Source: Ophelia neglecta (taxonomy: Eukaryota). From it: a DNA stretch of 64,000 bases. Every line of letters begins with the position of its first letter. The stretch's first letter is position 1. The translations under genes were made by a program, and so were the position numbers. The stretch covers positions 45,136,001-45,200,000 of the forward strand of contig OZ260667.1 in assembly GCA_965285935.1 (NCBI GenBank). The letters run 5' to 3'. The notes beneath the pieces were generated by a model that saw nothing but the letters and a program-made list of their open reading frames with translations, was not told where the DNA came from and ran no database searches. This document shows, piece after piece, positions 1-61,519 of this stretch.

Positions 1-3000
1 GGTGCCCTGATACTGCGAGAGCCACTCAAAACACGCCTGGCGTTGGAGGGAGCTGCGGCGGCTGTTGGCATTGTGGGTGTCCTCCACCAGGGAGCTGCTG
101 CGTTTGAAGACCGTCTGCTTCTCATCCTCTTGTGGGTCGCTGGAGCTGGTGGTGCGAGTCATTCTCTTTGTCTTGTTGATCATGCTATTCATGAACATTG
201 TACTTGAGACCATCGCCGGCAGTGACATATGGGCCTTTTCCATGGCTAGGAGAGATGCATTTCTGTTATATTCATGGGCCTGAGAAATTAAAGGATCAGA
301 CGAAGACTCAGAACTTACAGTAGTATGAACGCTCTCATCACTCGACGTCTCTTGATCGACATGATTTGACCAAGAACCAACAATATTTGCCAAGCCTCTT
401 GCCTTTAGTTTTTTAGTCTTGTCATTCAGTCTGTTGATAGTTGCGTCTAGTGCTCTGCGGCCTACATAAGGTAATGAAGTTTTTCTAGGCACAGTGTCTG
501 CCGCTGTCTTGTCTTTGACTGGTATGTCCATATTAGGAATACTAACATCCTGGCTGATGCTGCGATCGAAGTTAACACTACTCTGTTCACTTAGGGATCT
601 CATTGTCATCTTACACTTCTGACACAGGAATTTGTACGAGTCTACAAACGGCTGAAATAGGACTGTGAGCTTTGAGGCAGTAGAGTCAGTGTGATCGGAG
701 TCAGCATGGCTGCCATCAGTTTGGCAACCTTCGCTGAGATAATATAACATAGGCTCAAAGTCGGTAGTGCTCTGACTATCCAGCGCCATATAGGTCTGTG
801 TAGACATATCTTGACTGTCCGTCTGGTGCCTGGGTGTGCCATAAGGATTGGCTGGTCCTGCAGCCCCCATGGGAGGGTCATACTGAGTACCACAGTCACT
901 CACCACACACATGTGATCAGGCAGCGAGGCCAGGCAATGGTCAATGTCAGCAGGTTGAAACATGAGAGGAGAGAGCCTACCGTCGTCAGCCTGTACCTCC
1001 TCAGTGTGGACACTGGCCGCCGTCCTGTCGCTCGCCCTCCAGTCGCTCGCCCTCTCCTCCCCTGAGGAGCCCGAGGCAGTCTCACTACCTGACCTGGACA
1101 CCCTATCCAGACCATTCCCATCATCTACAATCATCACTAGCGGACTCGGGCAGAGTTCATTCGTACACATCACAGGATCCTCTTTTAGCTCTGTCTCATC
1201 AGGTGTCGCCTCTGGTATACAGTCTACAAATGAATCATCATTATCTATGGTGGGTGTATTTAAAACAACAGACCCTACGTTCAGATCTCCATCAGTGTTC
1301 GTTGTGGACATGCTGTCCTCTGATATTAAACGAAGCATGGCAGTGGGGCAGTGTTCACTCTTTTTGTCCTCGCTGCTGCTATTCTCAGCAGAGCTCTGAC
1401 TTGACTCTAAGCTATCATTTGTGTTATCCAGCTGCTCCATCTCAATGACTGTGACAGGAGAGACTGGCACAGGAGAGTTGGCAATGGGCAAGCCAAGGGA
1501 AATGGGAGGTGGAACACACAGACTGTCTCCATCCCCGGAGGGCCTGGGAGAAGGGGAGCGGGACACACTATCATCACAATCACTGAGCACCACAGACATG
1601 AGGGCAGGTTCTGGAGCTCTAGACTGCATGGACTCAAACCCATTGTCATCACTCCCAAAATAACTGACATCGTCAACTAAGCTGGAATCCTGGTGGTTCA
1701 CTTCGGGAGCTGTCATTATTTCGGCGACCTCTAAACTAGCAGAGGACCGAGAATCGAGTGCTGCTCTGCCGTTGTTGCTCACTACAATCATGGGTATGGG
1801 TACCACTGGGGAAGTTATAGATGTCACATGCTCTTCACCCACTTTTCCATCTAACATGCGATGAAGATCGTCTATATCCTGACTTCTCCTGTACAGCAAT
1901 TTGAAACATTCGGTAGACTCGATATCACTGTCCCCCTCTGAGATATCACTGACCACACTTGACCTGGAGCTGAACGGCCCACTATCAGAGCTGGTACAGG
2001 AGTGGTGACCATTTCTTTTGCTTCGCCTATCGCTGCTATGCTCTGACTTGGAGTCACTGTTCTGAGAAGAGCCACAAGATAGCCTCTCCTCTTCTTCCAG
2101 AAAAGCTTTGAGCTTTCCTCCTTTGCCCTTCTCTTCCTGATTGGGCAAGCATGCCAATTTCCCCTCCTCTTCTTCACTCAAAGTTTCAAGGCAAATTGGC
2201 AAAGATTTCTGGCGTGAGTTTGCAAATTGTTTGCGTTTCTTGAGAGACATTGCATCCACTTGGCCTGATCCATTTAAGATGCTTGCCTGTCTCTCAAGCA
2301 CATACTTTAATTGTTCTATGCTATCCTGACTTTCATAGCTTTCTCTTTTATTAAAGCTACTGTCTTTCTGAAAAAATGTTTTGGCATCCTGTTTCTTCTG
2401 GTCTTGGTGATATGAGAGTATGGTTGCCGAGCGTTTGAGCTTGGCACGTCTAGAAGGAGCTGAAGCTCTGCTGTTCACGTCTAACTTGTGTAAGAACTCA
2501 GACATATGATGACTCTTTCGCCTATACAGGGGAGTGGCTGGGCCTGAGGGGGGTCTTGAGCCAGAACCTGCATCAAAACTACTATAAATATCGGACACCT
2601 CCTCTGGCTCATAGCCACTCAGCCTGTCGCTTTGGGCCGTGATGACCTTTGAGAACCAATCTCTGGCAAATCTCTCTGGTAAGAAGCTATCATTGGCGCA
2701 GAAACCAAGATTCATCAGCATTTCTTCTGCAGTGACCATGCTCGGGAGTACAAAGGGTGCCTGCCCAAGCTTGTCTGAGTGAGAGGCGCTGGACATGCTA
2801 CTGGTATTGCTGTCCATGCTGGCTGTCCGGGTCATTCCAGCGATGCTGGAGTGTCGTCTGCCAATTGGATTGCTTATCCTGTCAGCTGCATGATGAGAAC
2901 CCATTGGCATTCTGGGAGGATGACTGTTCATCATGGCTGACATGGAGCTTCCTGTCGATTCTGTAGACGTTGTGATCGAACAGGATCTACCACGTCTCCT
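1..3000 (-). CDS. Giant internal exon (1000 codons, open to window edge) of a large spliced gene; Ser/acidic-rich, likely disordered protein with partial KRAP/ITPRID/TESPA1-like motif
   Basis: Acceptor ttattttgcag at 3001-3002. Hand translation from 3000 to 1 is stop-free (RRRGRSCSITTSTES...VTAEEMLMNLGFCANDSFLPERFARDW...RRSSLQRQACFEWLSQYQGT). Absent from the ORF track because there is no stop inside the window. Family assignment is weak. Confidence 0.9.
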
Positions 3001-3121
3001 CTGCAAAATAATTTGTGAATGGTTGAATTGAACTAAATAATGTCTTAAGTGTGATGGTCAGTACAATGAATGTATCTAATTTAACTGCATGCACAATACA
3101 CTAACAATCATGCCTATTTAC

Positions 3122-3917
3122 CTTATATTCCATGAGTTGGTCAAAGATGGTTCTATGTTCTGGGCTATAGAAGTCAGACGGCCTTCTGGAAGAAGAGTTA
3201 GTAGAACCACCATCATTGCTGTACTGACTGTGAGGAGTCTTGTGCCTAGAATGTACAAATGGCAAGTCCTCCTCACCCTCAGGAGCTATCAGATCACGAC
3301 CACGGCGAGAGGCCTTAGCCTTCATGTCTTTCCCACTAATGGAGGAGTCCATGGTGCTGCCACTTCTGGTAGACTGACCGTCAGATCCCTGCTCTCTGCC
3401 GCCATGATGGCTGTAATCATACTTGTTTCGCATTCTGACTTTCTCCCCTTGGAGTTTGTCAAACTCTTGCAGGTCATGATATGAGAGACCTCCAAACCCA
3501 GGCAGGTGGATTTCTTGCTCTAAATCATGGTGGCCTCCTAAATCCAAAGATTCCACCTCCTCAAAAGTCTCGTTGGACTGGCTAATGGAATGAGAGCCAG
3601 TGGACAAGGAGGACTTATCTGACTGGAAGGAAGGCTGGCTCTGTATGCGCCAGGAGGCTCGATGGCCCCGGCCAACAAATTGTCTCTCCATACTGTCCGC
3701 GCTGTATTCTTTAGAAGGATAGGGGTAGCTAGCCCCCACACTGCCGCTGAAGCTACTCGAGTCGGTGGTTGACAGAGAATGGTTGAGAGACTCAACCTCT
3801 TCAAATGTGGAGGCAGATGACGCACTAGAATGTTTTCTGCTAGGAACTTGTCTGCGTGCCATTTCTTCTTTCTCCCAAATTGCCGGAGGGAAATCAGAGT
3901 GTTGCATCCGGCGATGG
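3122..3917 (-). CDS. Coding exon (796 nt) of the large gene
   Basis: Matches ORF 3101-3907. Acceptor ttttgttctatgcag (3918-3919); donor AAG|gtaaat (3120-3121); phase 0 into the 3000 exon across a 121-nt intron. Confidence 0.9.
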
Positions 3918-6480: not shown

Positions 6481-9400
6481 CTTTGTCATCAGCCTGTCAT
6501 CATTAATTTTAATCAAGCAATTTTCAGTCTAACTATATATTATGCCCTTATTAAAGTTTTAAACATACAACAATTAGTTGCAGGTCAATTGATGGCAATT
6601 GTGGCTTATTAAAAACTTTCCATGTAAAGAGAATAATAAAATATATCCAGTAAGTCAGATGATAACAAAACTTTTCAATGATTTGATGTTGACTTGCTGT
6701 AGAGCTGGACCCAGGGGTGTAGACTTTATGAGTTTTTACCAGGCCCAGCCCCCCATACTGCTCAGGAAACGCTATCTTACCCATGTAAGGCATACACGTG
6801 TACTGTGTGCGGGGTACCAGGCATCTTATATGACAGATTAGAATTTATCATATATTACAATTTCAAATAAATGTACTAACAATCCTTATGAACCATCACA
6901 TGTTCATGTTCATACAATCTTGCTTGATCTGTTGATATGATCACAGAGAGAAACAATTCTAGTCCCATATATATTGTATTAATATATTCTGTAATTTCCC
7001 TGATTGTTTCTGATTTAAAAGCTATTTCCAGATAGCGGTGATAATGCCTTCTAGATATCAGGCTAGTCATTAGTTGACTGCTCTTGCTATAATGTTTGAC
7101 AATCATAGCAATCTAGAGATCTATTCTATTTGTATTCATGCTAGTGGTGCTTTTTGCAATAAAAAAAAAAAAAATCTGTATGAAGAAAAATTAAACATGA
7201 AAAGCAGGTAATAAGAGCTACCAGCCCTTCATAAACAAGACAAGTTTCCCTGTACTGGCAAAGCAAAGCATTCTACCTGTGCAAAGCATTCTACCTCGCG
7301 GGTTGGGGAGGGATAGAAAAACCCACCAAACCATAACAATCCACCACTTGCGATAAACCAAATGAAAAACTCCAGCCTTTTTTTAATTCAAGATATTAAG
7401 GGTGCCCATATAAAAATGGAGGTTTGCAGGTTAATATGAATTTATGTTTATCTGGTAGAGGGAATGGGGGTGGGGGGGGGGGGGTAAAAGAATCAAAGGG
7501 GTCTTTGATAACAGGGGTCATAAAATTGACACAGTTTCTGTCAAGGGTGGAGGAGGGTAGTAAAATGTTCCCTGCCACTGCAGCAAGGATTTGAACCCCC
7601 CCCCCTCCCCTCCCCTCCACTCCCACACACACTTAACAATTACAACCTATTTAGCATATGATAAACCATCTGTTACAAATAGCTTTGTTTCTATGTAATT
7701 TCTGCTTGTTGATTTAGGTATTCTGATACTGTTGTTATATTGGGCTCAAAGTCTATTGATCAGCGTCAGTAAAGCCAGGGCATATCATGTGACAGAGACA
7801 CACTAATACCGGTAGTTCTGGCCACAGTGCTCCTTATATACAATGTCATTGATTCTTATTGACAGACTGTACTGTGTTTCTATCTAATGTTCTTCTGATA
7901 TTGTACATGTATGTGATAGATGTCTGGGAAGTATCACCCGGTGAGGACAGCTCACCTGATACAGAAATACAGTGGAAAATAAAACTAAGTCCTTCAGTAA
8001 TCATCATAAGAATAATTATTAACTGGGTGAAAAAAATAAAATGGCATGGAAATAAATGACCATGTAGAAAATGTAATATAATCAGCTTTAAGTACAAAAT
8101 AATCATTTTGTACTTTTAATTTCAATTATGCTGATTTATTAAAACACTGCTGAATGTAATATTTTTTTGGAAGATGTCATCTTCTGAATATTATTTTAGA
8201 CACCAACCCTTGGTATTCAATCATCAGATCATTGTTTGAGTCTAGTAAGGCAGTTATGAAGACAGTCCGCCATGTTTTATCAGATTACTCTGATTGCCAT
8301 GTTCATTAAATCAATACTCCATTGTCAGTGTACAACAATAAAACTATGGGTGTACGGACTATAATGTACAGGGTGGGGTCAGATCCACTACCTGACCTCC
8401 TGGATCATACCGGTAGACATAGTTCATGGCTGCTACAACATCCAGAGGCAGGTCTCTATAGTCACATAGTCTTATTGTTGTGAACAAATTTATTTTCTAA
8501 CGGGCAATATGTAACTCCTTCATATTACTTATATATGTGCCATGTTTTCTCTGCTGGTTAGCTGGTTAATTATGTGTTCAATCTGTGTCTAGTAGGTCTG
8601 GCATCGATAACAGTAATCACTTTAGCTGTGCTTTATAATACCGGGTTATTATTATCAAATACATTTTGTTTTCTCACTCAGATCATACTCGTACCTTAAA
8701 GATGGCTTTGACATTAGGCCAAAACTTAAATAAATTATAAAAAATTGTAATTGTAATTTAAATATGAATTTAACTTGTCGTGAAGGGGAGAAGAGGCCTA
8801 TAGTAACAGCAGGGATTCTACATGATAACTAATTTCAGGTGGCATTCCAGCCGATCTCGTTATCTGACTGCTACCAGTCGAACACATGGAATCACAGGCA
8901 ATACATGTAGTTATTCAACTGTTGTTATTACATCGTATAATATGTGCCCATGGGTTACTAGTTAGTTGTCAGTATTTTGCAAATAGATGGCTAAATTGAT
9001 AATCTATACTAATTTTCATTGTACAATATACCACCAAACCAGTAACAGCAACAACCAATAAAATTGGTTGGAAAATAACAGCATTTGGGTTCATTTTCTT
9101 TAAAGCTTGCTTCTCAAGTCAAATCATATAGCACTGGTCAGTTTCATTGCAAGCATTTTAACTTATGAAAGGTTCTTTACACATTGACTGGTATGTGAGA
9201 GAGAAGGACTCGCAACAACCCTAATGACTTGGGTGCACAGTCCAGTGGATCTGAATACACGAAGTCCAGCATTATGGAATATCTGGCCAGGAGAACTTAG
9301 TGTAGTAGTTAAAAATGATTTCAATACTGAGTCAAAGAGAGGTGATGAAGGCTCAGACCAGTACTAGCTGTTGGTATACTACTGGGCTAAGAAATAGTAG

Positions 9401-18225: not shown

Positions 18226-19330
18226 CTGAGCTCCACAGAGAAAAGCCTGAGCACTGCCTCCCTTCAAAAGCATTAAGCCTGGGCTCCATAGGGAGCAGAC
18301 CTAGCTCCCTACAGAGGAGCCTCAATCTGCTCAAAAGAGAGGGGCCTGGGGTCCATAGGGAGGATCCTGCGGTCCACAGGGAGGAGCCTGGCGTCCATAC
18401 GGAGGAGCCTGGGGTCCACAGGGAGGAGCCTGGGGTCCATAGGGAGGAGGAGCCTGCAGTCCATAGGGAGGAACCTGGGGTCCATAGGGAGGAGCCTGGG
18501 GTCCACAGGGAGGAGCCTGGGGTCCATGGGGAGGAGCCTGGGGTCCATATGGAGGAACCTGGGGTCCAAAGGGAGGAGCCTGGGGTCCACAGGGACGAGC
18601 CTGGCGTCCATAGGGAGGAGCCTGGGGTCCTTAGGGAGGAGCCTGGGGTCCACAGGGAGGAGCCTTGGGTCCATAGGTAGGAACCTGGGGTCCATAGGGA
18701 GGAGCCTGGGGTCCACAGGGAGGAGCCTGGGGTCCATAGGGATGAGCCTGGGGTCCATAGGGAGGAGCCTGGGGTCCATAGGGAGGAGCCTGGGGTCCAC
18801 AGGGAGGAGCCTGGGGTCCATAGAGAGCAGACCTAGCTCCCATCTGATCAAAAGAGAGGGGCCTGGGGTCCATAGGAGGAGCCTGCAGTCCATAGGGAGG
18901 AGCCTGGGGTCCATAGGGAGGAGCCTGGGGTCCATAGGGAGGAGCCTGGGGTCCACAGGGAGGAGCCTGGGGTCCATAGGGAGGAGCCTGTGGTCTACAG
19001 GGAGGAGCCTGGGGTCCATAGGGAGGAGCCTGGGGTCTACAGGGAGGAGCCTGGGGTCCATAGGGAGGAGCCTGGGGTCCATAGGGAGAAGCCTGGGGTC
19101 CATAGAGAGCAGACCTAGCTCCCTACAGAGGTGCCTCAATCTGATCAAAAGAGAGGGGCCTGGGGTCCACAGGGAGGGGCCTGGGGTCCATAGGGAGGAG
19201 CCTGCAGTCCATAGGGAGGAACCCTGGCTACATATAGAGGAGCCTTGGGTCAAATGAAAGGAGCTTCAGAGTGAAGGATAAGCCTGAGCTACAAAGAGAG
19301 TCTCCACTCCATAGAGAGGTGCCTCATTCC
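18226..19330. repeat. 21-bp G-rich minisatellite (CATAGGGAGGAGCCTGGGGTC) with higher-order spacer
   Basis: Direct reading; explains the MDPRLLP / SIGRSLG ORFs. Confidence 0.95.
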
Positions 19331-19524: not shown

Positions 19525-19644
19525 CGGCAATCTGTAGTTGGGTCTTCCTGATAATCTCTTGGAACTTCTTTTCAATGAGTGCCTCCATGTTGGAAGATTC
19601 ACCATCGCTGCTTGCACCGTCACTATCTGAACACAGCGATTTGC
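19525..19644 (-). CDS. Symmetric phase 1-1 coding exon (120 nt)
   Basis: tgttttcag|...g|gtttgt; KSLCSDSDGASSDGESSNMEALIEKKFQEIIRKTQLQIA (within ORF 19421-19684). Confidence 0.8.
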
Positions 19645-20735
19645 CTGAAAACAATACCCAAACTTTCTGAAATGGCATCGTCACAGGAAGATATTTAATG
19701 TATCCACCTCATAATACACAGTACCAGTCAACTTGCACAAACACACTACATGATTCAAAAACAGACAGGAATGTATAACCAAATCAATAGGCAGAAATGA
19801 ACTATCTACATGTACATGTATGTTCCCTTCACCACTATATATTTCTAAAGATCATACCAATGAACCTGTTCAAAAATTTAGTATGTAAAGCTCTACAACC
19901 AATTTGACATAATGAAAAAGCCCTACAGTCAGATATGAAAGGTCGTTTGTATGTGCTGACAAATATACTTGTGAGTCAAATACTGTTGGGTGATCAACAA
20001 ACCAAGTCGGTTTTATTAGAGAGAGCCCAGTTGATTTGGGTTAGTATACAGTGAATCAATATTCACTTTCCTGAATTCAGTGTGCGTGTTGGTAAAAACA
20101 TTATACCTCTTGTACCTGTTAGACAAACATGATTCTATATGACTTAGAGGAATGAACATGTAAACTGTGTATCCTCTGACAAAAGACTAGTCTGTCCCCT
20201 CTTAAGCCTGCAGATGGCTGTATTTATGTATATAACACACCACACTGCAGTACTGACAGGTACTGGATAACTAGACAAAACCCCACAGAAATTCACTTCA
20301 AAGGGGTGGAGGATGATTTTTTCTTTGTGTGATAGGAGAAAACAATCTTTTACAATATACAAATTGTTTTTTTTTTACTTTATAGCTTTTTCAATTTTAC
20401 TTTATATTCATCCCCAATCACACTCCATGTTTTAACAGCTAAAGTCTTTCAATATTGATATAAACTGAGGTGAAACTTGAGTCAATTGTAAGCATGAACC
20501 ATTTTGTATTCTACTCAAATGCTAGGCAGAAACAACTTAGCTGTCTGAGACATGCCAATTTAGTCATTTTAAATCGCCCTCCTCTGCTATCATTCAGACT
20601 GCCTTGGTCTTTACGTTCTTAGAAAAGGCTCACCCCATATTTTCCTTAAGTAAATACTCAGCTTCTGCTGAACAGACAGAATAACAGCAGATTTTATAGC
20701 AACATATTAATTTTTCAAAGATGACCCTGACTTAC

Positions 20736-20999
20736 TGAGTGCTGCATGAAATCTTTCCCTTATGTATTGAGATTGCACTGTGTCAACATCGCTGTCCACG
20801 ATGAATTTGTCAAAGGTCATGATAGGAACGTTTGCCACTTGCTTTACCATCACGTTGTGGAACTGATTCTCAAAGTCTTCAGTCATGACGGACTCCATGT
20901 CGCTGTGGCCCCCACCGCCAAGCATGTGACGCGACTTTTTGCTGCCTGCAGGTTTAAAGGAAGGTCTGGTTTTCATTTTTGGCACCGGTTTACCACTAT
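20736..20999 (-). CDS. Symmetric phase 1-1 coding exon (264 nt)
   Basis: cttgtag|...a|gtaagt; within ORF 20707-20985; carries two copies of the acidic helical repeat. Confidence 0.85.
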
Positions 21000-22934
21000 C
21001 TACAAGCAGATGAGAAAGAAAGCAAAAGGGAGGTTAATAAAGGCCACACCATTAGCTATTAATAGTCCCTCCTCCTCTGACCAGTACAAGCAAAATACTA
21101 ACGTGAAAAGTATGAGAGGAAAGTCACTACAAGATAGACTTCTAATCATTATGAAACTGACAAGGATTGGTTTTTATAGTCTTACGCTGTGGAAAACAGT
21201 TTAAGTTGAATAAGCTATACACAGGTAATTATCTTGTTTATCATAAGTGGTATAAATAGTGTCAATGTACCAATCTCTTATAGAGTAACATAGTGTAAAC
21301 CAGAATATGGCTGCGAGAAAGTTTGCTCTTTTGGTATTGAGACATATTTGGCACATTAATGTTTATGGATAAGCACTACCAGTGAACTCAAATGGTTGAG
21401 CTTCACAATTTTTAATATTCTAGCAGCCTTCGGGAATAGTTGATGAATTTTGTGGCAGTCCTAAACATCATTAAAGTATTCTGCTAGCCACTAATTCCTG
21501 GGTTACAGTTATGTTATTTATTGGGGTTGATCACTTATATTATAAACAAGACAAGTACCAGTGGAGTTGAAAACTTAGTATTCATAATCCAACATTTTTA
21601 TGACAGCAATATAAAGATATTGTATATAATTTGATTGTTTAACTGATACCAATATCTACATAGTATCTACACACAGTATATTATACTACGGACATCTTAC
21701 TACCATGTACCCAAGCAAGCAAAGCCAAAATATAATATGAATTAATAACATAAAGATAATGAAGTAGGGAAGGATGAATGTTGAGACAACTGTACAGAGA
21801 ATATCTGAGGAATAATCAGCGACCTTTACATTCATCATGCACACCCCCTGATCTGATAGGCTTGTTACGGGCATGCAATGCTTCCCTATTTATCAATTAA
21901 TCAGACTTATTATAAACTCTCCCCCAGCTAACAATATCTCTAATGTTATGTAGTAGCCCAGTCAACTCTATCCCTACATTATAATTTTGAGATTTATGTT
22001 TTATTATTTACTGCAGCTAGATGGATTATATATCTTAAATATCCATACAAATTGTATAAATTTTATTCTAACACTGACACCGGGTCAGGCCAGGCTCATT
22101 ATCTTGTTTAATGCAGCTCAAACATTTAAGATCCTAGATTATTTTAAATTTGTTTAAATTTCTTGTGTTTTAAGTTAATAACATCACTACATTTTAGATA
22201 TAACATAGCTTACTGTTCATTACATAGTCACAAAGTTGTCATTTTATTAATCCAGGTACAAGAAACTATTGTTTTCTATTATAAGTAGTACAAAACCAGA
22301 CATGCCTACTACTGTTGTTTCATTGAACTTGCACCTACAAGCTGTAGGATTAACAGTGAGGTGCATGTTTGAGCATGTGGGGAAATTTGGCTCCCTACAA
22401 TATACATAAGATGTTAATCTAGACCACAAACAGGAACTGATTTTAAACTTTACGATGAACATTGATATATGAATGAAATGTACAATAAACATGTTGATCG
22501 CAGGTCACTTCATATGATTCAATGACTCTTGCCTAAATTACTGGACTTCAGTATGAGAATTGAATATGAACTTAATCCTGTTAGGGTTGTGCCTAAATAT
22601 ATACAGTCAACATTCATTGATGGGTTATCAAAACATTAAACTCCTTTATAATATATTAATGGCTAAATAAATAAGAGATTTTTGCTAGCTACCTAAAATG
22701 AGGCCTAACTTACATAGCCACTGTGGCTGTCATGTTTTTCCTTGATAGTGTATTTTCCTGATATTAGGCCCAGTGAAGCATGTCAAACATGAGCATGATG
22801 TATTATTCAGTGTTATAAACAGCACATATCTGTTAGTAAAATAACTAGTAAACTGAATTCACTGTGAACATGTGTAAAAAGCAAATCCCTAGCTGCCACC
22901 ACTAGAAATCATCTTGTTGATGATTTTCACTTAC

Positions 22935-22997
22935 CCGACTTTTTAAAAACCCTTTTGGGTTTCTGGGACATGTTTTTTAATTTGTATTTACTCTTTC
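22935..22997 (-). CDS. Small symmetric phase 1-1 coding exon (63 nt), lysine-rich
   Basis: tattgcag|...g|gtaagt; KSKYKLKNMSQKPKRVFKKS; length divisible by 3. Confidence 0.7.
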
Positions 22998-23380
22998 CTG
23001 CAATATACAAGGGATTTTGATACACAAATACTTTGAAGGTTTTAAAAGTATGATATCTTAGACCTGTTCAAAATCATCAGTGGGCACATATCATATAATT
23101 AATTTTATAAAATACAATAATGCATCTGTGTACCATGTGAAAATTGACCATGCAATAAGAGTTGTTTTTAATCATAATTATTTTACTTGGAAAAGATAAT
23201 GGCACAACCATTCTTAAATAATTAAATACCACACTTTTCTCTATTTACAAATGAATATTTATATATTCAATCTTGGTTTTTGATTTGAATGAAACATTAA
23301 AGTTTCATAAATCACACTCTCTATAGGCAAACCAACTAGTAAGCTAACATCAAACATTAACAACAAAAGCTTGTCTTTAC

Positions 23381-23500
23381 CTGAGGTATTAGAGGTAGTA
23401 ACTACTATAGATTTTTTATATTCCTTTTCTATGTCTTCAGTTTTTACGGAATCGTGGTCCGTCAAACTATCTTTCCGAGACAAGTTGAGCAGTGGCACAT
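23381..23500 (-). CDS. Symmetric phase 1-1 coding exon (120 nt)
   Basis: catatag|...g|gtaaag; VPLLNLSRKDSLTDHDSVKTEDIEKEYKKSIVVTTSNTS. Confidence 0.85.
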
Positions 23501-24286
23501 CTATATGCAGCGCAAAAAGTACACGAAAGGCAATTAGTAAATAAAAGCACTACTTTCTATTTATTCATGTAACCCACAAACTTTTTGCCAGTTCAAAGTT
23601 TTATAAATCTTACACATACACAATAAGGGGTGCCAAAATAATCAAAAGAATATTGTGCTCATTGTGAAACATAATATTTAATGAACTTAATCAGAAACAG
23701 CACAAAATTACTGTAAATAAACATGGCATAAATTGAATATCACTTCCAATTCAACGGCAATAATTGTCTGGGCTACAATCACATCTGGCAAATTAGAGTA
23801 TCTTAATTAATATCAAGCAACAGCACTCCAGACAGTATTAGTGGTTAAAATTACTGTGTTTAGAGTTGAATCCCAACATGCACACCCCTTCCCCCCCCCC
23901 AGCCCCCCTGCCTTTATAATCAGGTCTACAGGCTGTATTCATAATTTACATGTATGTACTCATGATTAAATTGTACAGTATTATGAAAAGCAATTGTACA
24001 AGCAGAAGTAATGTTTGATTGAGCCTCTATAACCATTACTAACAGTTCTACGCTTAAGATAATCAGAATATCAATGAGCAAAAATAACAAGTCAATCAAT
24101 TTCACTGGCTTTGGTAAACATTGTAAGCAAACTGGTAATCATTACATAAAAGCCAAACTATGTAGCATTCAACCAACACCACAATTCGCACTAATTTACA
24201 GGTACAACATTTATTTGCAGGTAATGGCAAGCCAGTCTATACCAACAGGCTACATACAAATGTTACAAGACACAGGCACAAGTTAC

Positions 24287-24391
24287 CTGGCCTGTAGGAA
24301 GGCACTCGGGGTGGCACCATGGCTTTAAGAAAAGCCTTCTCGTAATCCTCAGTTTTAATAGAATCGCGGTCACTGGGGCACTTGTGACGTC
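24287..24391 (-). CDS. Symmetric phase 1-1 coding exon (105 nt)
   Basis: cccacag|...g|gtaact; RHKCPSDRDSIKTEDYEKAFLKAMVPPRVPSYRP. Confidence 0.85.
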
Positions 24392-24786
24392 CTGTGGGAT
24401 GGCATATAATTAAATAATACTTTGTCATCAAGTAAAAATCACTTTTTTCCATTAAAAACCCATCCAAATTACTAACAAATACTGGTGATATTCTCAAACG
24501 CACTTGTTTAAGGTATAACATATAAATAAAAAGCATGGCTTATACATAGGCACAGCAACATGCTTTGCATTACATAGCACACATAAAATGCAGATGCTTT
24601 GAACTTTCCCATAACACATAGAAAGCAATGATTAAAATAACAAAATGTATCAAATAGTCACCATATCATATTTTTAGTAATTAGGTAAAAGGATTTTCTA
24701 TTTGATAAAAATTGTTTCCTAATGACTAAAGACTATGTGTTAAGCAAATGCGGTGCAGGAAATTCTGTCATTATAGAGCGGCCTAC

Positions 24787-24894
24787 CTTTATTTTGACTT
24801 GTGAGTATATGGTGGTATTTCTCATCAAACTGTTTGGCCATGTCCGAGTCTAGAGCTTCGTATCGTGGCGTGCCTTTCTGGGTTGTGTCTTCAT
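24787..24894 (-). CDS. Symmetric phase 1-1 coding exon (108 nt)
   Basis: cttacag|...g|gtaggc; EDTTQKGTPRYEALDSDMAKQFDEKYHHILTSQNK. Confidence 0.85.
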
Positions 24895-26006: not shown

Positions 26007-26153
26007 CTTCTGAAGATTCTGAGGCATAGATACCAGCCTTGCCTACGATGTGTGGGTCCTGGTCAGAATCACCGTCCACACTGCCCGTCCCCAGGCCGGT
26101 GTCTCCCTCATCCTTCTCAGCTAAATGACTCCGATGTACCTTACCTAACGAAT
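26007..26153 (-). CDS. Symmetric phase 1-1 coding exon (147 nt)
   Basis: ttcttacag|...g|gtacgc; SLGKVHRSHLAEKDEGDTGLGTGSVDGDSDQDPHIVGKAGIYASESSE. Confidence 0.8.
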
Positions 26154-31203: not shown

Positions 31204-31882
31204 TGACCATACCTGCAATACCATACGCCGCCTGGTGGTGACTGCAGAACTACGGTTTTCGTACTTCCCGGTCGACCACTTTTCGCGAGCCACTGCGCAT
31301 CCCACTGCGCATGTTATGCAGGTCACCCAGGGACATGCGAACAGCTGATCAAGATGGCTTGACAGGCTGTCCCCAGTTGTTCCACGCGAAGTATTTCGGA
31401 TCTCCAATCGCGACTCCTCGTTTATTATCCAATTGTTCTGGGTCGAAATGTCTAGAACACAGCCTAGATCGTTTGTTCACGTTCAATTTGTCAACGATCG
31501 TGCAGTTTTCCTCCGAAGGTTTGCCCCGCTCTTCGTAGGCTACAAGGCGCCGCCATAATGCAACCGATGCCGGGTTGTCACGGGGCCATTTAACCCAAGA
31601 TATTTGTTCCATCCAAGGATATTTGTCCAAGTGTTTCATCTTCCTGCTATGCGAGAAGCATTCTGCTGCCTCGCAGATAAACACCATCGTCCCTTCTTTC
31701 GTTTTAAAGCTCAAAATAACGGTTGTACGACGCAGACCTCAGAATGCCATGAAAACGCCATGAAATGTTTATGACAGCTTGGGTACGCCTACTGGAGTGG
31801 TCGACTTTTTTCCCACAATGCATTACGTTATCGTAGTTCTGCGGTTTCCACCAGGCGGCGTATGGTATTGCAGGTATGGTCA
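31204..31882 (-). mobile_element. 679-bp internally deleted DNA transposon with 51-bp TIRs carrying a THAP ORF (ISL2EU/PIF-Harbinger-like; superfamily tentative)
   Basis: TIRs 31204-31254 and 31832-31882 (outer 35 bp perfect, 48/51 overall); AT on both flanks; extra inverted 10-mer GTCGACCACT (31271-31280 / 31796-31805); CpG-rich. Confidence 0.85.
31349..31687 (-). CDS. Stand-alone THAP (C2CH) zinc-finger ORF, 112 aa
   Basis: acgATGg; MVFICEAAEC...KWP...LWRRLV...LCSRHF...DPKYF has the C-x4-C, P, W, CxxHF and terminal P-x-x-F hallmarks of THAP. Confidence 0.75.
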   Translation of the reverse strand: MVFICEAAECFSHSRKMKHLDKYPWMEQISWVKWPRDNPASVALWRRLVAYEERGKPSEENCTIVDKLNVNKRSRLCSRHFDPEQLDNKRGVAIGDPKYFAWNNWGQPVKPS

Positions 31883-39893: not shown

Positions 39894-40011
39894 CTGGTCT
39901 GACTCTGGTGCTGTCTTGGTTTGTTTCATCCCCAGTGTCAAACTCCACGCCCTGGTCCTTTAAGTCTCTTCTCTGCTGTTTGCTGGGTCTAGTCTTAGAC
40001 ATTCTAGCCAC
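39894..40011 (-). CDS. Coding exon (118 nt, phase 0-1)
   Basis: gataaag|...g|gtaagt; VARMSKTRPSKQQRRDLKDQGVEFDTGDETNQDSTRVRP; phases match both neighbours. Confidence 0.8.
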
Positions 40012-40557: not shown

Positions 40558-40772
40558 CTCTACTCCTGTCATATTGTACAGCTCGGTGTCTATTTTATCC
40601 ATTATGAAGTCCACTGCATCAAATTTAGCTTGCTTAGACCACTTTTTCCCCTGAAAGTTATGTCCACTCGACTGGCCCTTTCTGCCTTTGGGTGTTCTCA
40701 TACTATCTGCTATTTCCAAACGAGGCGTTTTCTCGATTTCAGATTCACAGTCCTCATCTAGCAGAGACCGAG
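40558..40772 (-). CDS. Coding exon (215 nt, phase 1-0)
   Basis: tgttttcag|...gag|gtaagt; within ORF 40516-40782 (RSLLDEDCESEIEKTPR...IDTELYNMTGVE). Confidence 0.85.
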
Positions 40773-45132: not shown

Positions 45133-45265
45133 CTGAGGTGACCGACTCCTGGTCAGCGTTGTCCCGGGGTGTGTGGTCACCCTGCTGGTCAGACAGCCGC
45201 TGGTCAGGCTCCTGGTCACTCCACTCTGTGTCTGCCTCACTGCCCACATCTAACATCACCTCCCT
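45133..45265 (-). CDS. Coding exon (133 nt, phase 0-1)
   Basis: gtgttttag|...g|gtgggc; REVMLDVGSEADTEWSDQEPDQRLSDQQGDHTPRDNADQESVTS. Confidence 0.8.
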
Positions 45266-54426: not shown

Positions 54427-55566
54427 TTACTGGTAGTGTCCTACGGGGAGACCCTGTGTCTGCCAACCCGGGGTAGATAGACCATAAGCCATTCCTGTAT
54501 GGCTGCTGCTCACAAGGGTAGTGGAGGGGCTGGCTGCAGGTGTGTACTGGTTCTTCAGGGTGACAGAGTGCTCTACTTGCCGACGTGCCAGTCTTCTGTC
54601 AAAGTCTCCGGCTTGGAAGGCCTCCAGACAAGCTGCGTGGATGCCCCAGAAGTAGCCCTTGCCGTTGCGTGCTCGTCCACACTTGATGAAGCAGCTGTTG
54701 GTGGAGAGGTTGTGTCTGATGGAGTTCCTCCAGGAATGTTTGGCAGTGTGGTAGTAGGGGTAGTTGTCCAAGATGTACTTGTAGATGTCTCCAAGCAGCA
54801 GACGGCCTTCTCTGGAGGTCATGATGGCCTTGGCTATCATGCAGGTATACGAGTCCTCTGGCTTCTCCAACTCACTGGAGGCAGTGTTCTGGGCAGGCAT
54901 ACACTGGATTGGCTGATGGCTGACAGGAAGTCTGGGGGCTGGTCGCTGGTAGTAACCCTGGCTCCTCACCGGATGGGGTGAACTGAAGTCTGGCTGTGGC
55001 ATTGAAGACAGGCATTGCTCCAGCATACTGAGAACAGAACTGTCTGGAGATTCTGTACTAGTACTAGAGTATCCAGAGTCTGGGGAGTCACAATATCTAG
55101 CAGTGTAGCCACTTTCTTGAGAAATCATAGATTCTGGAGAACTGAGCAACAGGTCCACATCTTGAGCACTGAGGAAGGGTAGAGGACCAGATGATAGGAG
55201 GTCTAGGTGATCATCCAAGTGCTCAGGTACAGCTATGGTTGTGGTGGGACTCACTGTGACTGGGGACCGGTAGATGTCATCTGGCATCTCACCACACATC
55301 TGAATCAAGTCAGCAAACAGATCTGTTGATGGTATACAGTCCTCTGTCAGGCTGCTAGTCGGATAACTCTCCGGGGTCTGCTCCTCAACATCAACAATGT
55401 CCTCCAGGCAGAAGTTGGCAATGTAATTGTCTATTGCAGGGTCAGTAGTATAGGTTGGCTCATTAAGCTGTTCTTTCATGGATTCGTTGATGTCATTAAG
55501 ACAGGAGAACAGCTCAGCGTAGATGTCTGACTGGCTGGTGGACTGGGATGTGACAACTGGCTCCAT
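54427..55566 (-). CDS. foxQ2: Forkhead-box transcription factor, FoxQ2-type, intronless (paralog 1, 379 aa)
   Basis: Forkhead domain KPEDSYTCMIAKAI...LGDIYKYILDNYPYY...WRNSIRHNLS..CFIK. The wing region GRARNGKGYFWGIH...FQAGDFDRRLARRQV matches the FoxQ2 signature (NGKGHYWAIHP...GDFRRR). Confidence 0.9.
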   Translation of the reverse strand: MEPVVTSQSTSQSDIYAELFSCLNDINESMKEQLNEPTYTTDPAIDNYIANFCLEDIVDVEEQTPESYPTSSLTEDCIPSTDLFADLIQMCGEMPDDIYRSPVTVSPTTTIAVPEHLDDHLDLLSSGPLPFLSAQDVDLLLSSPESMISQESGYTARYCDSPDSGYSSTSTESPDSSVLSMLEQCLSSMPQPDFSSPHPVRSQGYYQRPAPRLPVSHQPIQCMPAQNTASSELEKPEDSYTCMIAKAIMTSREGRLLLGDIYKYILDNYPYYHTAKHSWRNSIRHNLSTNSCFIKCGRARNGKGYFWGIHAACLEAFQAGDFDRRLARRQVEHSVTLKNQYTPAASPSTTLVSSSHTGMAYGLSTPGWQTQGLPVGHYQ

Positions 55567-60376: not shown

Positions 60377-61519
60377 TTACTGGTAGTGTCCTACGGGGAG
60401 ACCCTGTGTCTGCCAACCCGGGGTAGATAGACCGTAAGCCATTCCTGTATGGCTGCTGCTCACAAGGGTAGTGGAGGGGCTGGCTGCAGGAGTGAAGTGG
60501 TTTTTCAGGGTGACCGAGTGCTGTACTTGACGACGAGCCAGTCTTCTGTCAAAGTCTCCAGCTTGGAAGGCCTCTAGACAAGCTGCGTGGATGCCCCAGA
60601 AGTAGCCCTTGCCGTTACGTGCACGTCCACACTTGATGAAGCAGCCGTTGGTGGAGAGGTTGTGTCTGATGGAGTTCCTCCAGGAATGTTTGGCAGTGTG
60701 GTAGTAGGGGTAGTTGTCTAAGATGTACTTGTAGATGTCTCCAAGCAGCAGACGGCCTTCTCTGGAGGTCATGATGGCCTTGGCTATCATGCAGATGTAC
60801 GAGTCCTCTGGCTTCTCCAACTCACTGGAGGCAGTGTTCTGGGCAGGCATACACTGGATTGGCTGATGGCTGACAGGAAGTCTGGGGGCCAGTCGCTGGT
60901 AGTAACCCTGGCTCCTCACTGGATGGGGTGAACTGAAGTCTGGCTGTGGCATTGAAGACAGGCATCTCTCCAGCATACTGAAAACAGAACTGTCTGGAGA
61001 TTCTCTAGTACTAGTACTAGAGTATCCAGAGTCTGGGGAGTCACAATATCTAGTAGTGTAGCCACATCCTTGAGAAGTTATGGACTCCGGAGAACTCAAC
61101 AACAGATCAACATCTTGAGGGCTGAGGAAAGGTAGAGGACCAGATGACAGGACGCCTAGGTTTTCATCCAAGTGGTCAGGTACAGCAATGGTTGTGGTGG
61201 GACTCACTGGGACTGGGGACTGGTAGGGGTCATCTGGCATCTCACCACACATCTGGACCAGGTCAGCAAATAGCTCTGTAGATGGCTGTCTGTCCTCTGT
61301 CAGGCTGCTAGTGTGATAACTCTCCTGGGTCTGCTCCTCAACATCAGCAAAGTGCTCCAGGCAGAAATTGGCAATGTAGATGTCTATTGCAGAGTCAGTA
61401 GTATAGGTTGGTTCATTAAGCTGTTCTCTCATGGAGTCATTGATGTCATCAAGACAGGAGAAGAGCTCTGTGTATATGTCAGACTGGCTGGTGGACTGGG
61501 ATGTGACAACTGGCTCCAT
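60377..61519 (-). CDS. foxQ2: Forkhead-box transcription factor, FoxQ2-type, intronless (paralog 2, 380 aa)
   Basis: Same domain; collinear, highly similar tandem copy of 54427-55566 with an intact ORF. Confidence 0.9.
   Translation of the reverse strand: MEPVVTSQSTSQSDIYTELFSCLDDINDSMREQLNEPTYTTDSAIDIYIANFCLEHFADVEEQTQESYHTSSLTEDRQPSTELFADLVQMCGEMPDDPYQSPVPVSPTTTIAVPDHLDENLGVLSSGPLPFLSPQDVDLLLSSPESITSQGCGYTTRYCDSPDSGYSSTSTRESPDSSVFSMLERCLSSMPQPDFSSPHPVRSQGYYQRLAPRLPVSHQPIQCMPAQNTASSELEKPEDSYICMIAKAIMTSREGRLLLGDIYKYILDNYPYYHTAKHSWRNSIRHNLSTNGCFIKCGRARNGKGYFWGIHAACLEAFQAGDFDRRLARRQVQHSVTLKNHFTPAASPSTTLVSSSHTGMAYGLSTPGWQTQGLPVGHYQ

What the first reader, a model, noticed from the sequence alone, without database searches (positions are those of the whole stretch)
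19525..24894. Unrecognised acidic-helix repeat encoded module-by-module in symmetric phase 1-1 exons
Five exons carry six copies of one motif: ALDSDMAKQFDEKYHHIL, SDRDSIKTEDYEKAFLKAM, TDHDSVKTEDIEKEYKKSI, SDMESVMTEDFENQFHNVM, SDVDTVQSQYIRERFHAAL and GESSNMEALIEKKFQEII. The consensus is about [ST]D.[DE]S[VI].TED[FYI]E..[FY]...h. All seven exons from 26153 to 19525 are phase 1-1 and divisible by 3 (seen), so any subset can be skipped in frame. Inference: an exon-duplicated multivalent binding module (acidic lead-in plus amphipathic helix with i/i+4/i+8 hydrophobics) whose valency is tunable by splicing. I do not recognise it as a named domain. Two copies contain psi-K-x-E SUMO consensus sites (IKTE, VKTE).
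Basis: partly seen in the sequence, partly recalled or inferred. Interest (0 to 1): 0.75.

Follow-up and report, generated by a model that had tools for sequence, protein, structure and literature searches.

The report
Conserved acidic motif array, cassette exons
These exons encode repeated copies of a short acidic motif in the disordered part of a large, unnamed coiled-coil protein found from worms to fish, and relatives' annotated isoforms include or skip single copies.

Summary
On the minus strand I read six AG/GT-bounded exons (26153-19525), all phase 1-1 and divisible by 3; I found six, not seven. Five carry the six motif copies. Three copies (C, D, E1) are canonical SDx[DE]S[VI]xTED[FY]Exx[FY] units, highly significant against an HMM built only from other species. 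E2 is conserved by orthology, F is moderately significant and B is weak.

The exons belong to a single-copy gene of over 65 kb. It encodes a disordered N-terminal half and a roughly 900-residue C-terminal coiled coil lying beyond the window. The family reaches annelids, brachiopods, nemerteans, a flatworm, echinoderms, hemichordates, amphioxus, a tunicate, fishes, amphibians and turtles. All names are automatic; Pfam and PDB sequence searches are blank.

Annotated isoforms in relatives differ by in-frame cassettes carrying single units: Lingula has 4, 2 or 1 units, and Owenia has 5 or 4. This supports splice-tunable copy number there.

A binding function, the partner and splicing in this organism are untested, because no RNA runs exist. 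The SUMO lysine is not conserved (14 of 69). Best reading: an undescribed short-linear-motif array in an uncharacterised protein family.

The parts
26007..26153 (-). Exon A, 147 nt, phase 1-1. Acidic 'DTGLGTGS' segment with no motif copy.
   Evidence: Splice sites read. Aligns to Patiria P0018 residues 195-243.
24787..24894 (-). Exon B, 108 nt, phase 1-1. Variant (type II-like) unit EALDSDMAKQFDEKYHHIL; the weakest copy.
   Evidence: tblastn to Lingula P0003 residues 306-343, E 0.92, colinear. Type II HMM i-E 2.1.
24287..24391 (-). Exon C, 105 nt, phase 1-1. Canonical unit SDRDSIKTEDYEKAFLKAM.
   Evidence: Unit HMM 25.6 bits, i-E 1.7e-9.
23381..23500 (-). Exon D, 120 nt, phase 1-1. Canonical unit TDHDSVKTEDIEKEYKKSI.
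   Evidence: Unit HMM 16.1 bits, i-E 1.8e-6.
20736..20999 (-). Exon E, 264 nt, phase 1-1. It holds a basic lead, canonical unit E1 (SDMESVMTEDFENQFHNVM), the conserved block VKQVANVPIMTFD, and unit E2 (SDVDTVQSQYIRERFHAAL).
   Evidence: Unit HMM 36.3 bits. phmmer found 50 relatives at E<=1e-3. Conservation profile. Single copy in the genome.
19525..19644 (-). Exon F, 120 nt, phase 1-1. Type II unit DGESSNMEALIEKKFQEIIRK.
   Evidence: Top six-frame hit of the type II HMM, i-E 1.5e-4.
39894..40011 (-). Upstream exon of the same gene (KDQGVEFDTGDE). It ends in phase 1. The acceptor is putative.
   Evidence: tblastn to Lingula, Owenia, Ptychodera and Branchiostoma.
40558..40626 (-). Part of an upstream exon (KFDAVDFIMDKIDTELY). 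Boundaries not determined.
   Evidence: tblastn to Branchiostoma P0024 residues 49-71.
45146..45244 (-). Part of the N-terminal acidic exon (GSEADTEWSD). Boundaries not determined.
   Evidence: tblastn to Ptychodera P0011 residues 71-107, E 0.53, colinear.
3122..3917 (-). Downstream exon with two [ST]FEEVESL motifs. It starts in phase 2 and ends in phase 0, and is likely specific to the long isoform.
   Evidence: tblastn to Lingula P0003 residues 635-825, E 3e-8.
1..3057 (-). Open frame of 1019 codons: a giant exon that runs off the window, with the conserved LGF..FLPERFxxDW segment. The acceptor was not located.
   Evidence: tblastn to P0003 residues 826-1747, E 2.5e-30. Pfam blank.

Best explanation
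The exons encode part of the intrinsically disordered N-terminal half of a single-copy gene of over 65 kb on the minus strand. The gene codes for a large coiled-coil protein of an unnamed family spread across bilaterians.

Each exon carries one copy of a 19-23 residue unit, and exon E carries two. The unit has a phosphorylatable acidic lead-in (S-D-x-[DE]-S-[VI]-x-T-E-D), followed by hydrophobic or aromatic residues at i, i+4 and i+7/8 ([FY]-E-x-x-[FY]-x-x-Phi-Phi).

Inferred: each unit is a short linear motif that folds into a short helix when it docks on a still unknown partner. Several copies on a dimeric coiled-coil scaffold would give avidity.

Shown in relatives only: single-unit exons are cassette exons, so isoforms carry different numbers of units. 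The last unit, fused to the VKQVAGVP..SFD..DSDLDTV block, is always kept.

Inferred from the CK1 and CK2 consensus sites as I recall them: the invariant S and T of the lead-in make binding phospho-regulated.
For: Exon anatomy and phases were read from the sequence.

The unit is significant and confined to these exons within the 64 kb.

In 69 non-redundant units from other species, the positions not fixed by my selection regex are still conserved: S 46, D 56, E/D 61, S 64 and V/I 62 of 69.

In the exon-E alignment, whose rows were found by phmmer and not by regex, D33 is kept in 30/32, S36 in 31/32, T39 in 30/31, E40 in 30/31 and F46 in 29/32. The flank is not conserved (0.22 against 0.55-0.62).

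70 of 90 vertebrate and other relatives retrieved through the C-terminal coiled coil alone carry S[VI].TE[DE][FY]...[FY].

Isoform cassettes:
- Lingula: 84 aa with 2 units, and 36 aa with 1 unit, giving 4, 2 or 1 units.
- Owenia: 39 aa or 44 aa, each with 1 unit.
- Anneissia: 28 aa, and Branchiostoma: 34 aa, each with a degenerate unit.

Disorder with local helices:
- AlphaFold2 on exon E gives mean pLDDT 60.7 and a helix at 70-86.
- A sea-urchin N-terminal protein gives mean pLDDT 36.5, with helices at units 1 and 3 and at E2.

The C-terminal coiled-coil exons lie 14-22 kb beyond the window on the same strand.
Against: - No partner, binding or phosphorylation was tested.
- No RNA run holds the region, so neither splicing nor skipping is shown in this organism.
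- The isoforms of relatives are annotation models whose RNA support I could not inspect.
- Amphipathicity is modest. The hydrophobic moment is 0.30-0.52, and it is at or above the shuffled value only weakly: p 0.014-0.066 for four units, and 0.28 and 0.57 for F and E2.
- AlphaFold2 gave only a 4-residue helix for E1 and none for sea-urchin unit 2.
- Copy B is not significant on its own.
Confidence: 0.6

Rival explanations
1. The units act mainly as phospho-acidic patches. Constitutive phosphorylation of the S/T in the SDxES..TED lead-in by an acidophilic kinase would create multivalent phospho-epitopes for a phospho-binding domain, as in the MDC1 SDT repeats. The aromatic residues would be secondary.
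For: The near-invariant S, D, S, T, E and D of the lead-in. S at -7 has an acid at +3, which fits the CK2 consensus as I recall it. The precedent is the MDC1 SDT repeats, phosphorylated by CK2 and bound by NBS1 (PMC2315670 and PMC2442910; search listing and abstract starts only).
Against: The aromatic positions are as conserved as the lead-in. F/Y at +7 is in 69 of 69 units by selection, and F46 is in 29/32 rows of the independent alignment. No SDT(D) core is present. Nothing was tested biochemically.
Confidence: 0.2
2. The units are not docking sites for another protein. They would fold back on the protein's own coiled coil or on each other, for auto-inhibition or as a structural element, and unit number would only tune linker length.
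For: The last unit is fused to a longer conserved block of about 57 residues (VKQVAGVP..SFD..DSDLDTV..F..AL) that looks larger than a typical linear motif. The family always pairs the units with the conserved C-terminal coiled coil.
Against: AlphaFold2 finds no packed fold in exon E (pTM 0.21) or in an 839-residue N-terminal protein (pTM 0.20). Units vary in number from 1 to 5 canonical copies across species and isoforms, which is unusual for a fixed intramolecular interface.
Confidence: 0.12
3. The resemblance among the six copies is chance or compositional similarity in an acidic low-complexity region, with no repeat.
For: Copy B fails significance alone. E2, B and F are not hit by the canonical-unit HMM.
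Against: Three copies score 16-36 bits against an HMM built without the window. The strict pattern occurs 3 times against 0.005 expected. The same units recur in orthologues from about ten phyla or classes.
Confidence: 0.03

Closest known systems
Tissue-regulated cassette exons that encode disordered segments with embedded binding motifs (general principle; PMC3437557, seen as search listing and abstract start)
   Same: Short symmetric exons encoding disordered sequence with a conserved linear motif. Inclusion or skipping changes the motif content of the isoform.
   Different: That work is a general statistical principle in mammals. Here the same motif is repeated on successive exons of one gene, so splicing changes copy number rather than presence or absence. 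Regulation by tissue is unknown.
MDC1 SDT repeats (PMC2315670, PMC2315671, PMC2442910; listing and abstract starts)
   Same: Several copies of a short acidic S/D/T-rich motif in a disordered region of a scaffold protein, acting multivalently. Acidophilic-kinase consensus sites.
   Different: There is no S-D-T-D core here, and the unit has an extra conserved aromatic i/i+4 part. The protein is a different family: a coiled-coil protein, not a BRCT/FHA damage mediator. Phosphorylation and binding are untested.
FAM21 (WASH complex) LFa repeat elements binding retromer (PMC3374753, PMC11010949; listing and abstract starts)
   Same: Many copies of a short acidic motif with aromatic or hydrophobic anchors in a long disordered tail. 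Multivalency is needed for function.
   Different: The consensus is different (L-F plus an acidic run, as I recall it). Those copies are not arranged one per exon, as far as I know. The protein family is unrelated.
Acidic amphipathic-helix motifs of the p53 transactivation type, F-x3-W-x2-L (recalled, from no call)
   Same: An acidic context with hydrophobic residues at i, i+4 and i+7, and a disorder-to-helix transition on binding.
   Different: Those are single copies in transcription factors. No sequence relationship was tested or is expected.

Membership tests
Unnamed bilaterian 'TEDFE' coiled-coil protein family (Lingula XP_013384246, Owenia CAH1801742, Ptychodera XP_070572042, Polyodon XP_041078596 and others) | Canonical units SDx[DE]S[VI]xTED[FY]Exx[FY] in the N-terminal half | tested here: met
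   Three window units score 16-36 bits against an HMM of 69 units from other species.
Unnamed bilaterian 'TEDFE' coiled-coil protein family | Last unit fused to the VKQVAGVP..SFD..DSDLDTV block | tested here: met
   Exon E matches 50 relatives at E<=1e-3, the best at 8e-35. Alignment.
Unnamed bilaterian 'TEDFE' coiled-coil protein family | Colinear N-terminal landmarks (acidic D.EWS, IDxEL, GVEFDTGD, DTGLGTGS) and, in long isoforms, FEEVESL and LGF..FLPERF..W | tested here: met
   tblastn of six orthologues gives colinear hits from 45244 down to 7.
Unnamed bilaterian 'TEDFE' coiled-coil protein family | Conserved C-terminal coiled coil of about 900 residues | tested here: met
   Matches to Lingula P0015 residues 1110-1500 at G000:C12:45114411-45122192 on the minus strand, 14-22 kb left of the window.
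Any Pfam-A family | Score above the gathering threshold | tested here: not met
   No family for the 6 exon peptides at E<=10. The 8 full-length relatives give only sub-threshold coiled-coil hits.
SUMO consensus site psi-K-x-E | Lysine conserved at the position before T-E | tested here: not met
   K in 14 of 69 units; R 19, Q 12, M 8. The site is present in window units C and D only.
LIR / Atg8-interacting motif | [WFY]-x-x-[LIV] core | tested here: not met
   The residue three after the first aromatic is Q, R, K or H in most units (column +6). The consensus is recalled from memory. The separate FEEVESL motifs (about 3800 and 3570) do fit F-x-x-V but were not tested.
FFAT motif | Small residue at core position 5 after the aromatic at position 2 | tested here: not met
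   The corresponding column is Q, R, K or H. The consensus is recalled from memory.
MDC1-type SDT repeats | S-D-T-D core, CK2 phosphorylation and NBS1 binding | tested here: not met
   No S-D-T-D in the window units. Phosphorylation and binding are not testable with these tools.

The most novel reading that the evidence does not exclude
The unit is a previously undescribed, bilaterian-wide short linear motif. It would be the phospho-regulated docking site of a conserved partner on an uncharacterised dimeric coiled-coil scaffold. Its valency would be set exon by exon through alternative splicing, from 1 to 5 canonical copies. The whole system seems absent from mammals, birds and ecdysozoans, since none appeared among the named hits, which would explain why it has no name.
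Probability: 0.35. Interest if true: 0.6.

Novelty: new member of a known kind. Interest (0 to 1): 0.45.

Why it matters
If the reading holds, this is a sharply conserved and still unnamed linear motif in a protein family that has escaped study, apparently because model mammals, flies and nematodes lack it.

One unit per symmetric exon, together with isoforms carrying 4, 2 or 1 units in a relative, makes it a clean natural case of valency set by splicing. A motif profile could enter ELM or Pfam, and the unit peptides are an obvious bait for finding the partner and hence the function of the family.

It does not bear on a long-standing open question, so the interest is moderate.

Tried and rejected
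- Pfam on exon peptides, on the large downstream frames, on 8 full-length relatives and on the antisense ORFs gave nothing above threshold.
- PDB sequence searches with exon E and with its 33-row profile gave nothing except one chance scFv hit at E 1.3.
- The ESM Atlas gave no usable hit.
- AlphaFold2 on exon E and on a sea-urchin N-terminal protein gave low-confidence, mostly coil models. I therefore ran no fold search.
- RNA evidence: no RNA run holds the region, only 3 DNA runs of one study. Read laying was not used, because DNA contigs cannot show splicing.
- Literature: 'ch211-102c2.8', the only clone-style name in the family, gave 0 papers. 'TEDFE' gave 563 papers, and the 15 listed were all irrelevant word fragments. 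So I found no description in print with these two searches. Supplements were not consulted.
- A recalled likeness of the LGF..FLPERF segment to KRAP/ITPRID-type domains was not borne out by Pfam.
- Calpastatin-like, nebulin-like, gamma-ear or AP-2 appendage, B56 LxxIxE, beta-TrCP degron, LC8 TQT and kinesin light-chain Y-acidic motifs were considered from memory. I dropped them because spacing or key residues do not fit the column frequencies. None of these was tested against a curated motif library, since ELM is not available here.
- A seventh phase 1-1 exon was sought and not found.
- Earlier findings of this scan gave nothing on this gene.
Full report
**What is in the sequence.**
From the minus strand I delimited six exons, each with an AG acceptor and a GT donor:
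- A 26153-26007 (147 nt)
- B 24894-24787 (108 nt)
- C 24391-24287 (105 nt)
- D 23500-23381 (120 nt)
- E 20999-20736 (264 nt)
- F 19644-19525 (120 nt)

Every exon starts with two bases that complete a codon and ends with one base that starts the next. All six are therefore phase 1-1 and divisible by three. The last bases are G or A and the first two are AT, GA or GC, so every possible skip gives D, G, N, R or S at the junction and never a stop.

I found six exons, not the seven stated. A scan for further open phase 1-1 AG..GT segments with reasonable splice signals returned only A-D. Six orthologous proteins added no further exon in the interval.

**Is the repeat more than chance?**
From proteins of other species I collected 69 non-redundant units and built an HMM that contains nothing from the window. 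Against the six-frame translation of all 64 kb it hits only three places:
- E1: 36.3 bits, i-E 8e-13
- C: 25.6 bits, 2e-9
- D: 16.1 bits, 2e-6

The next hit is at -4.6 bits. A strict pattern occurs 3 times against 0.005 expected from 200 block shuffles. A loose one occurs 5 times (four real, one at 6712) against 0.705.

The other three copies are a different flavour. E2 (SDVDTVQSQYIRERFHAAL) is part of the most conserved block of the family. F and B resemble a second unit type seen in relatives (SDLDS..IExKFQxIxxKK). An HMM of eight such units puts F first in the six frames (i-E 1.5e-4), E2 second (0.059) and B fourth (2.1, not significant).

All six align without gaps on the spacing SDxD[ST]-x5-Phi-x3-[FY]-x3-Phi. 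So there are three strong copies, one strong by orthology, one moderate and one weak. Third-codon identity between units is about a quarter, as for unrelated DNA, so the duplications are old.

**Which gene.**
phmmer with exon E against 1.84 billion representatives gave 50 proteins at E<=1e-3, 19 at E<=1e-10 and 1 at E<=1e-30. Many are about 100-residue fragments from short contigs. The long ones come from these species:
- Lingula
- Owenia
- Ptychodera
- Patiria
- Acanthaster
- Anneissia
- Antedon
- two sea urchins
- Branchiostoma
- Tubulanus
- Macrostomum
- Polyodon

Their names are all automatic: trichohyalin-like, cingulin-like, myosin-11, CEP250-like, restin homolog, or uncharacterized.

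They share one architecture:
- an acidic N-terminus
- IDxEL and GVEFDTGD landmarks
- DTGLGTGS
- the unit array
- in long isoforms, a giant middle part with [ST][FY]EEVESL and LGF..FLPERF..W
- a C-terminal coiled coil of about 900 residues

tblastn of six of them puts colinear matches on the window from 45244 down to 7. In the window's own genome, the coiled-coil exons lie at C12:45114411-45122192 on the same strand, 14-22 kb beyond the window's left end. Exon E is single copy in the 762-Mb assembly.

The spliced model was searched exon by exon only.

**Conservation.**
- In the exon-E alignment (33 rows, found by phmmer and not by my regex), the basic flank has a mean top-residue share of 0.22. 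E1, the VKQVAGVP..SFD block and E2 have 0.62, 0.61 and 0.55. D33, S36, T39, E40 and F46 are kept in 29-31 of the 31-32 rows with a residue in that column.
- In the 69 units, the positions that my selection pattern did not fix are still conserved: S 46, D 56, E/D 61, S 64 and V/I 62 of 69.
- A search with only the C-terminal 230 residues of the paddlefish protein found 90 relatives in fishes, sharks, amphibians and turtles, plus a nemertean, a tunicate and crinoids. Of these, 70 carry S[VI].TE[DE][FY]...[FY] near the N-terminus, typically as one ESVCTEDFxxKF unit.
- A search with words from the Lingula repeat region returned 20 proteins, all long and automatically named. Thirteen had been seen before; the seven new ones are Lingula and Owenia isoforms or fish proteins.

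No mammal, bird, arthropod, nematode, mollusc or cnidarian was named. Given the word-based and length-limited searches, this suggests absence but does not prove it.

**Splicing.**
No RNA run holds the region; only three DNA runs of one study do. Splicing in this organism is therefore untested.

In relatives, annotated isoforms differ by in-frame cassettes that contain units:
- Lingula X3, X7 and X8 carry 4, 2 and 1 canonical units. The differences are an 84-residue cassette with two units and a 36-residue cassette with one.
- Owenia isoforms lack either a 39-residue cassette (unit 4) or a 44-residue cassette (unit 2).
- Anneissia has a 28-residue cassette and Branchiostoma a 34-residue cassette, each holding a degenerate unit.
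- Larger skips remove 276, 501 and 452 residues in Acanthaster, Branchiostoma and Polyodon.

Lingula's cassette starts with G and the next segment with D, the same junction residues as at the window's B/C and C/D boundaries. This fits conserved phase-1 introns.

The last unit, with its VKQVAGVP block, is present in the Lingula and Owenia isoforms compared.

Several short-contig fragments diverge right after MVKQV. This suggests that other species have an intron inside what is exon E here.

**Structure and mechanism.**
- AlphaFold2 on exon E with 33 sequences gives mean pLDDT 60.7 and pTM 0.21. It shows a helix over E2 (70-86) and four helical residues in E1.
- On an 839-residue sea-urchin N-terminal protein it gives mean pLDDT 36.5. 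The few helices fall on the IDxEL landmark, a type II-like segment, units 1 and 3, and E2.
- The hydrophobic moment of the helical part is 0.30-0.52. It is at or above the shuffled value with p 0.014-0.066 in four units, but not in E2 or F.

The region is thus disordered with local helical propensity at the units, which is the signature of short linear motifs.

I infer docking of an unknown partner by an induced short helix, avidity from several copies on a dimeric coiled coil, and likely control by phosphorylation of the invariant S/T in the acidic lead-in. The CK1 and CK2 consensus sites behind that last point are recalled from memory. None of this was tested.

The SUMO reading is not a conserved feature: K precedes T-E in only 14 of 69 units.

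**Comparison with what is known.**
- Pfam has no model for the exons or for eight full-length relatives.
- PDB sequences give nothing, and the ESM Atlas gives nothing.
- Two literature searches found no description.

The general principle, cassette exons encoding disordered segments with binding motifs, is established (PMC3437557, listing and abstract start). Multivalent acidic repeat motifs have precedents in the MDC1 SDT repeats (PMC2315670, PMC2442910) and the FAM21 LFa repeats (PMC3374753). I saw only listings and abstract starts of these. The unit does not meet the sequence definitions of those motifs, nor of LIR or FFAT motifs as I recall them.

I therefore file it as a new member of a known kind: an undescribed linear-motif array in an uncharacterised protein family.

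**Both strands and surroundings.**
The plus-strand ORFs over exons E and F have no Pfam match and look like mirror frames. A 21-bp minisatellite lies in the intron below exon F. The FEEVESL exon starts in phase 2, so at least one unrecognised exon must lie between 19525 and 3917.

**Verdict.**
- The SUMO detail is not supported.
- Interest is moderate.

Noticed in passing
window 54427-55566 (-) and 60377-61519 (-): Two intronless ORFs of 379 and 380 aa, each with a Forkhead domain (PF00250, E about 1e-29). They are 342/380 identical, so this is a recent tandem duplicate about 6 kb apart.
   Followed up: partly
window 3122-3917 (-): An exon with two copies of [ST]FEEVESL, a motif also present in Lingula and Patiria long isoforms. 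It fits an F-x-x-V LIR-like core by recall. The exon starts in phase 2, so it cannot follow exon F directly, and unrecognised exons must lie between 19525 and 3917.
   Followed up: partly
window 1-3057 (-): An open frame of 1019 codons that runs off the window. It is a giant serine-rich exon with a conserved LGF..FLPERFxxDW segment shared with Lingula and Patiria. Lingula isoform X7 skips the whole middle part (1668 aa). Pfam is blank.
   Followed up: partly
window 18339-19251: A 21-bp minisatellite with 42.7 copies and 82% matches, in the intron just downstream of exon F. It creates long spurious ORFs on both strands.
   Followed up: no
window 31352-31738 (-): An ORF with a weak THAP-domain match (E 0.005, 18 bits, below the 23.9 cut-off), inside an intron of the gene.
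   Followed up: partly
alignment A1 (fragments P0039, P0045-P0049): Several exon-E homologues from short contigs diverge immediately after MVKQV. This suggests that in those species an intron splits the canonical unit from the VPxxSFD/DSDLDTV block, so the window's exon E may be a fusion of two ancestral exons.
   Followed up: no
relatives P0078-P0167: Vertebrate members (fishes, sharks, amphibians, turtles) keep a single canonical unit with a conserved Cys (ESVCTEDFxxKF), whereas invertebrates have 1-5 canonical units. No mammal or bird appeared among 90 hits.
   Followed up: partly
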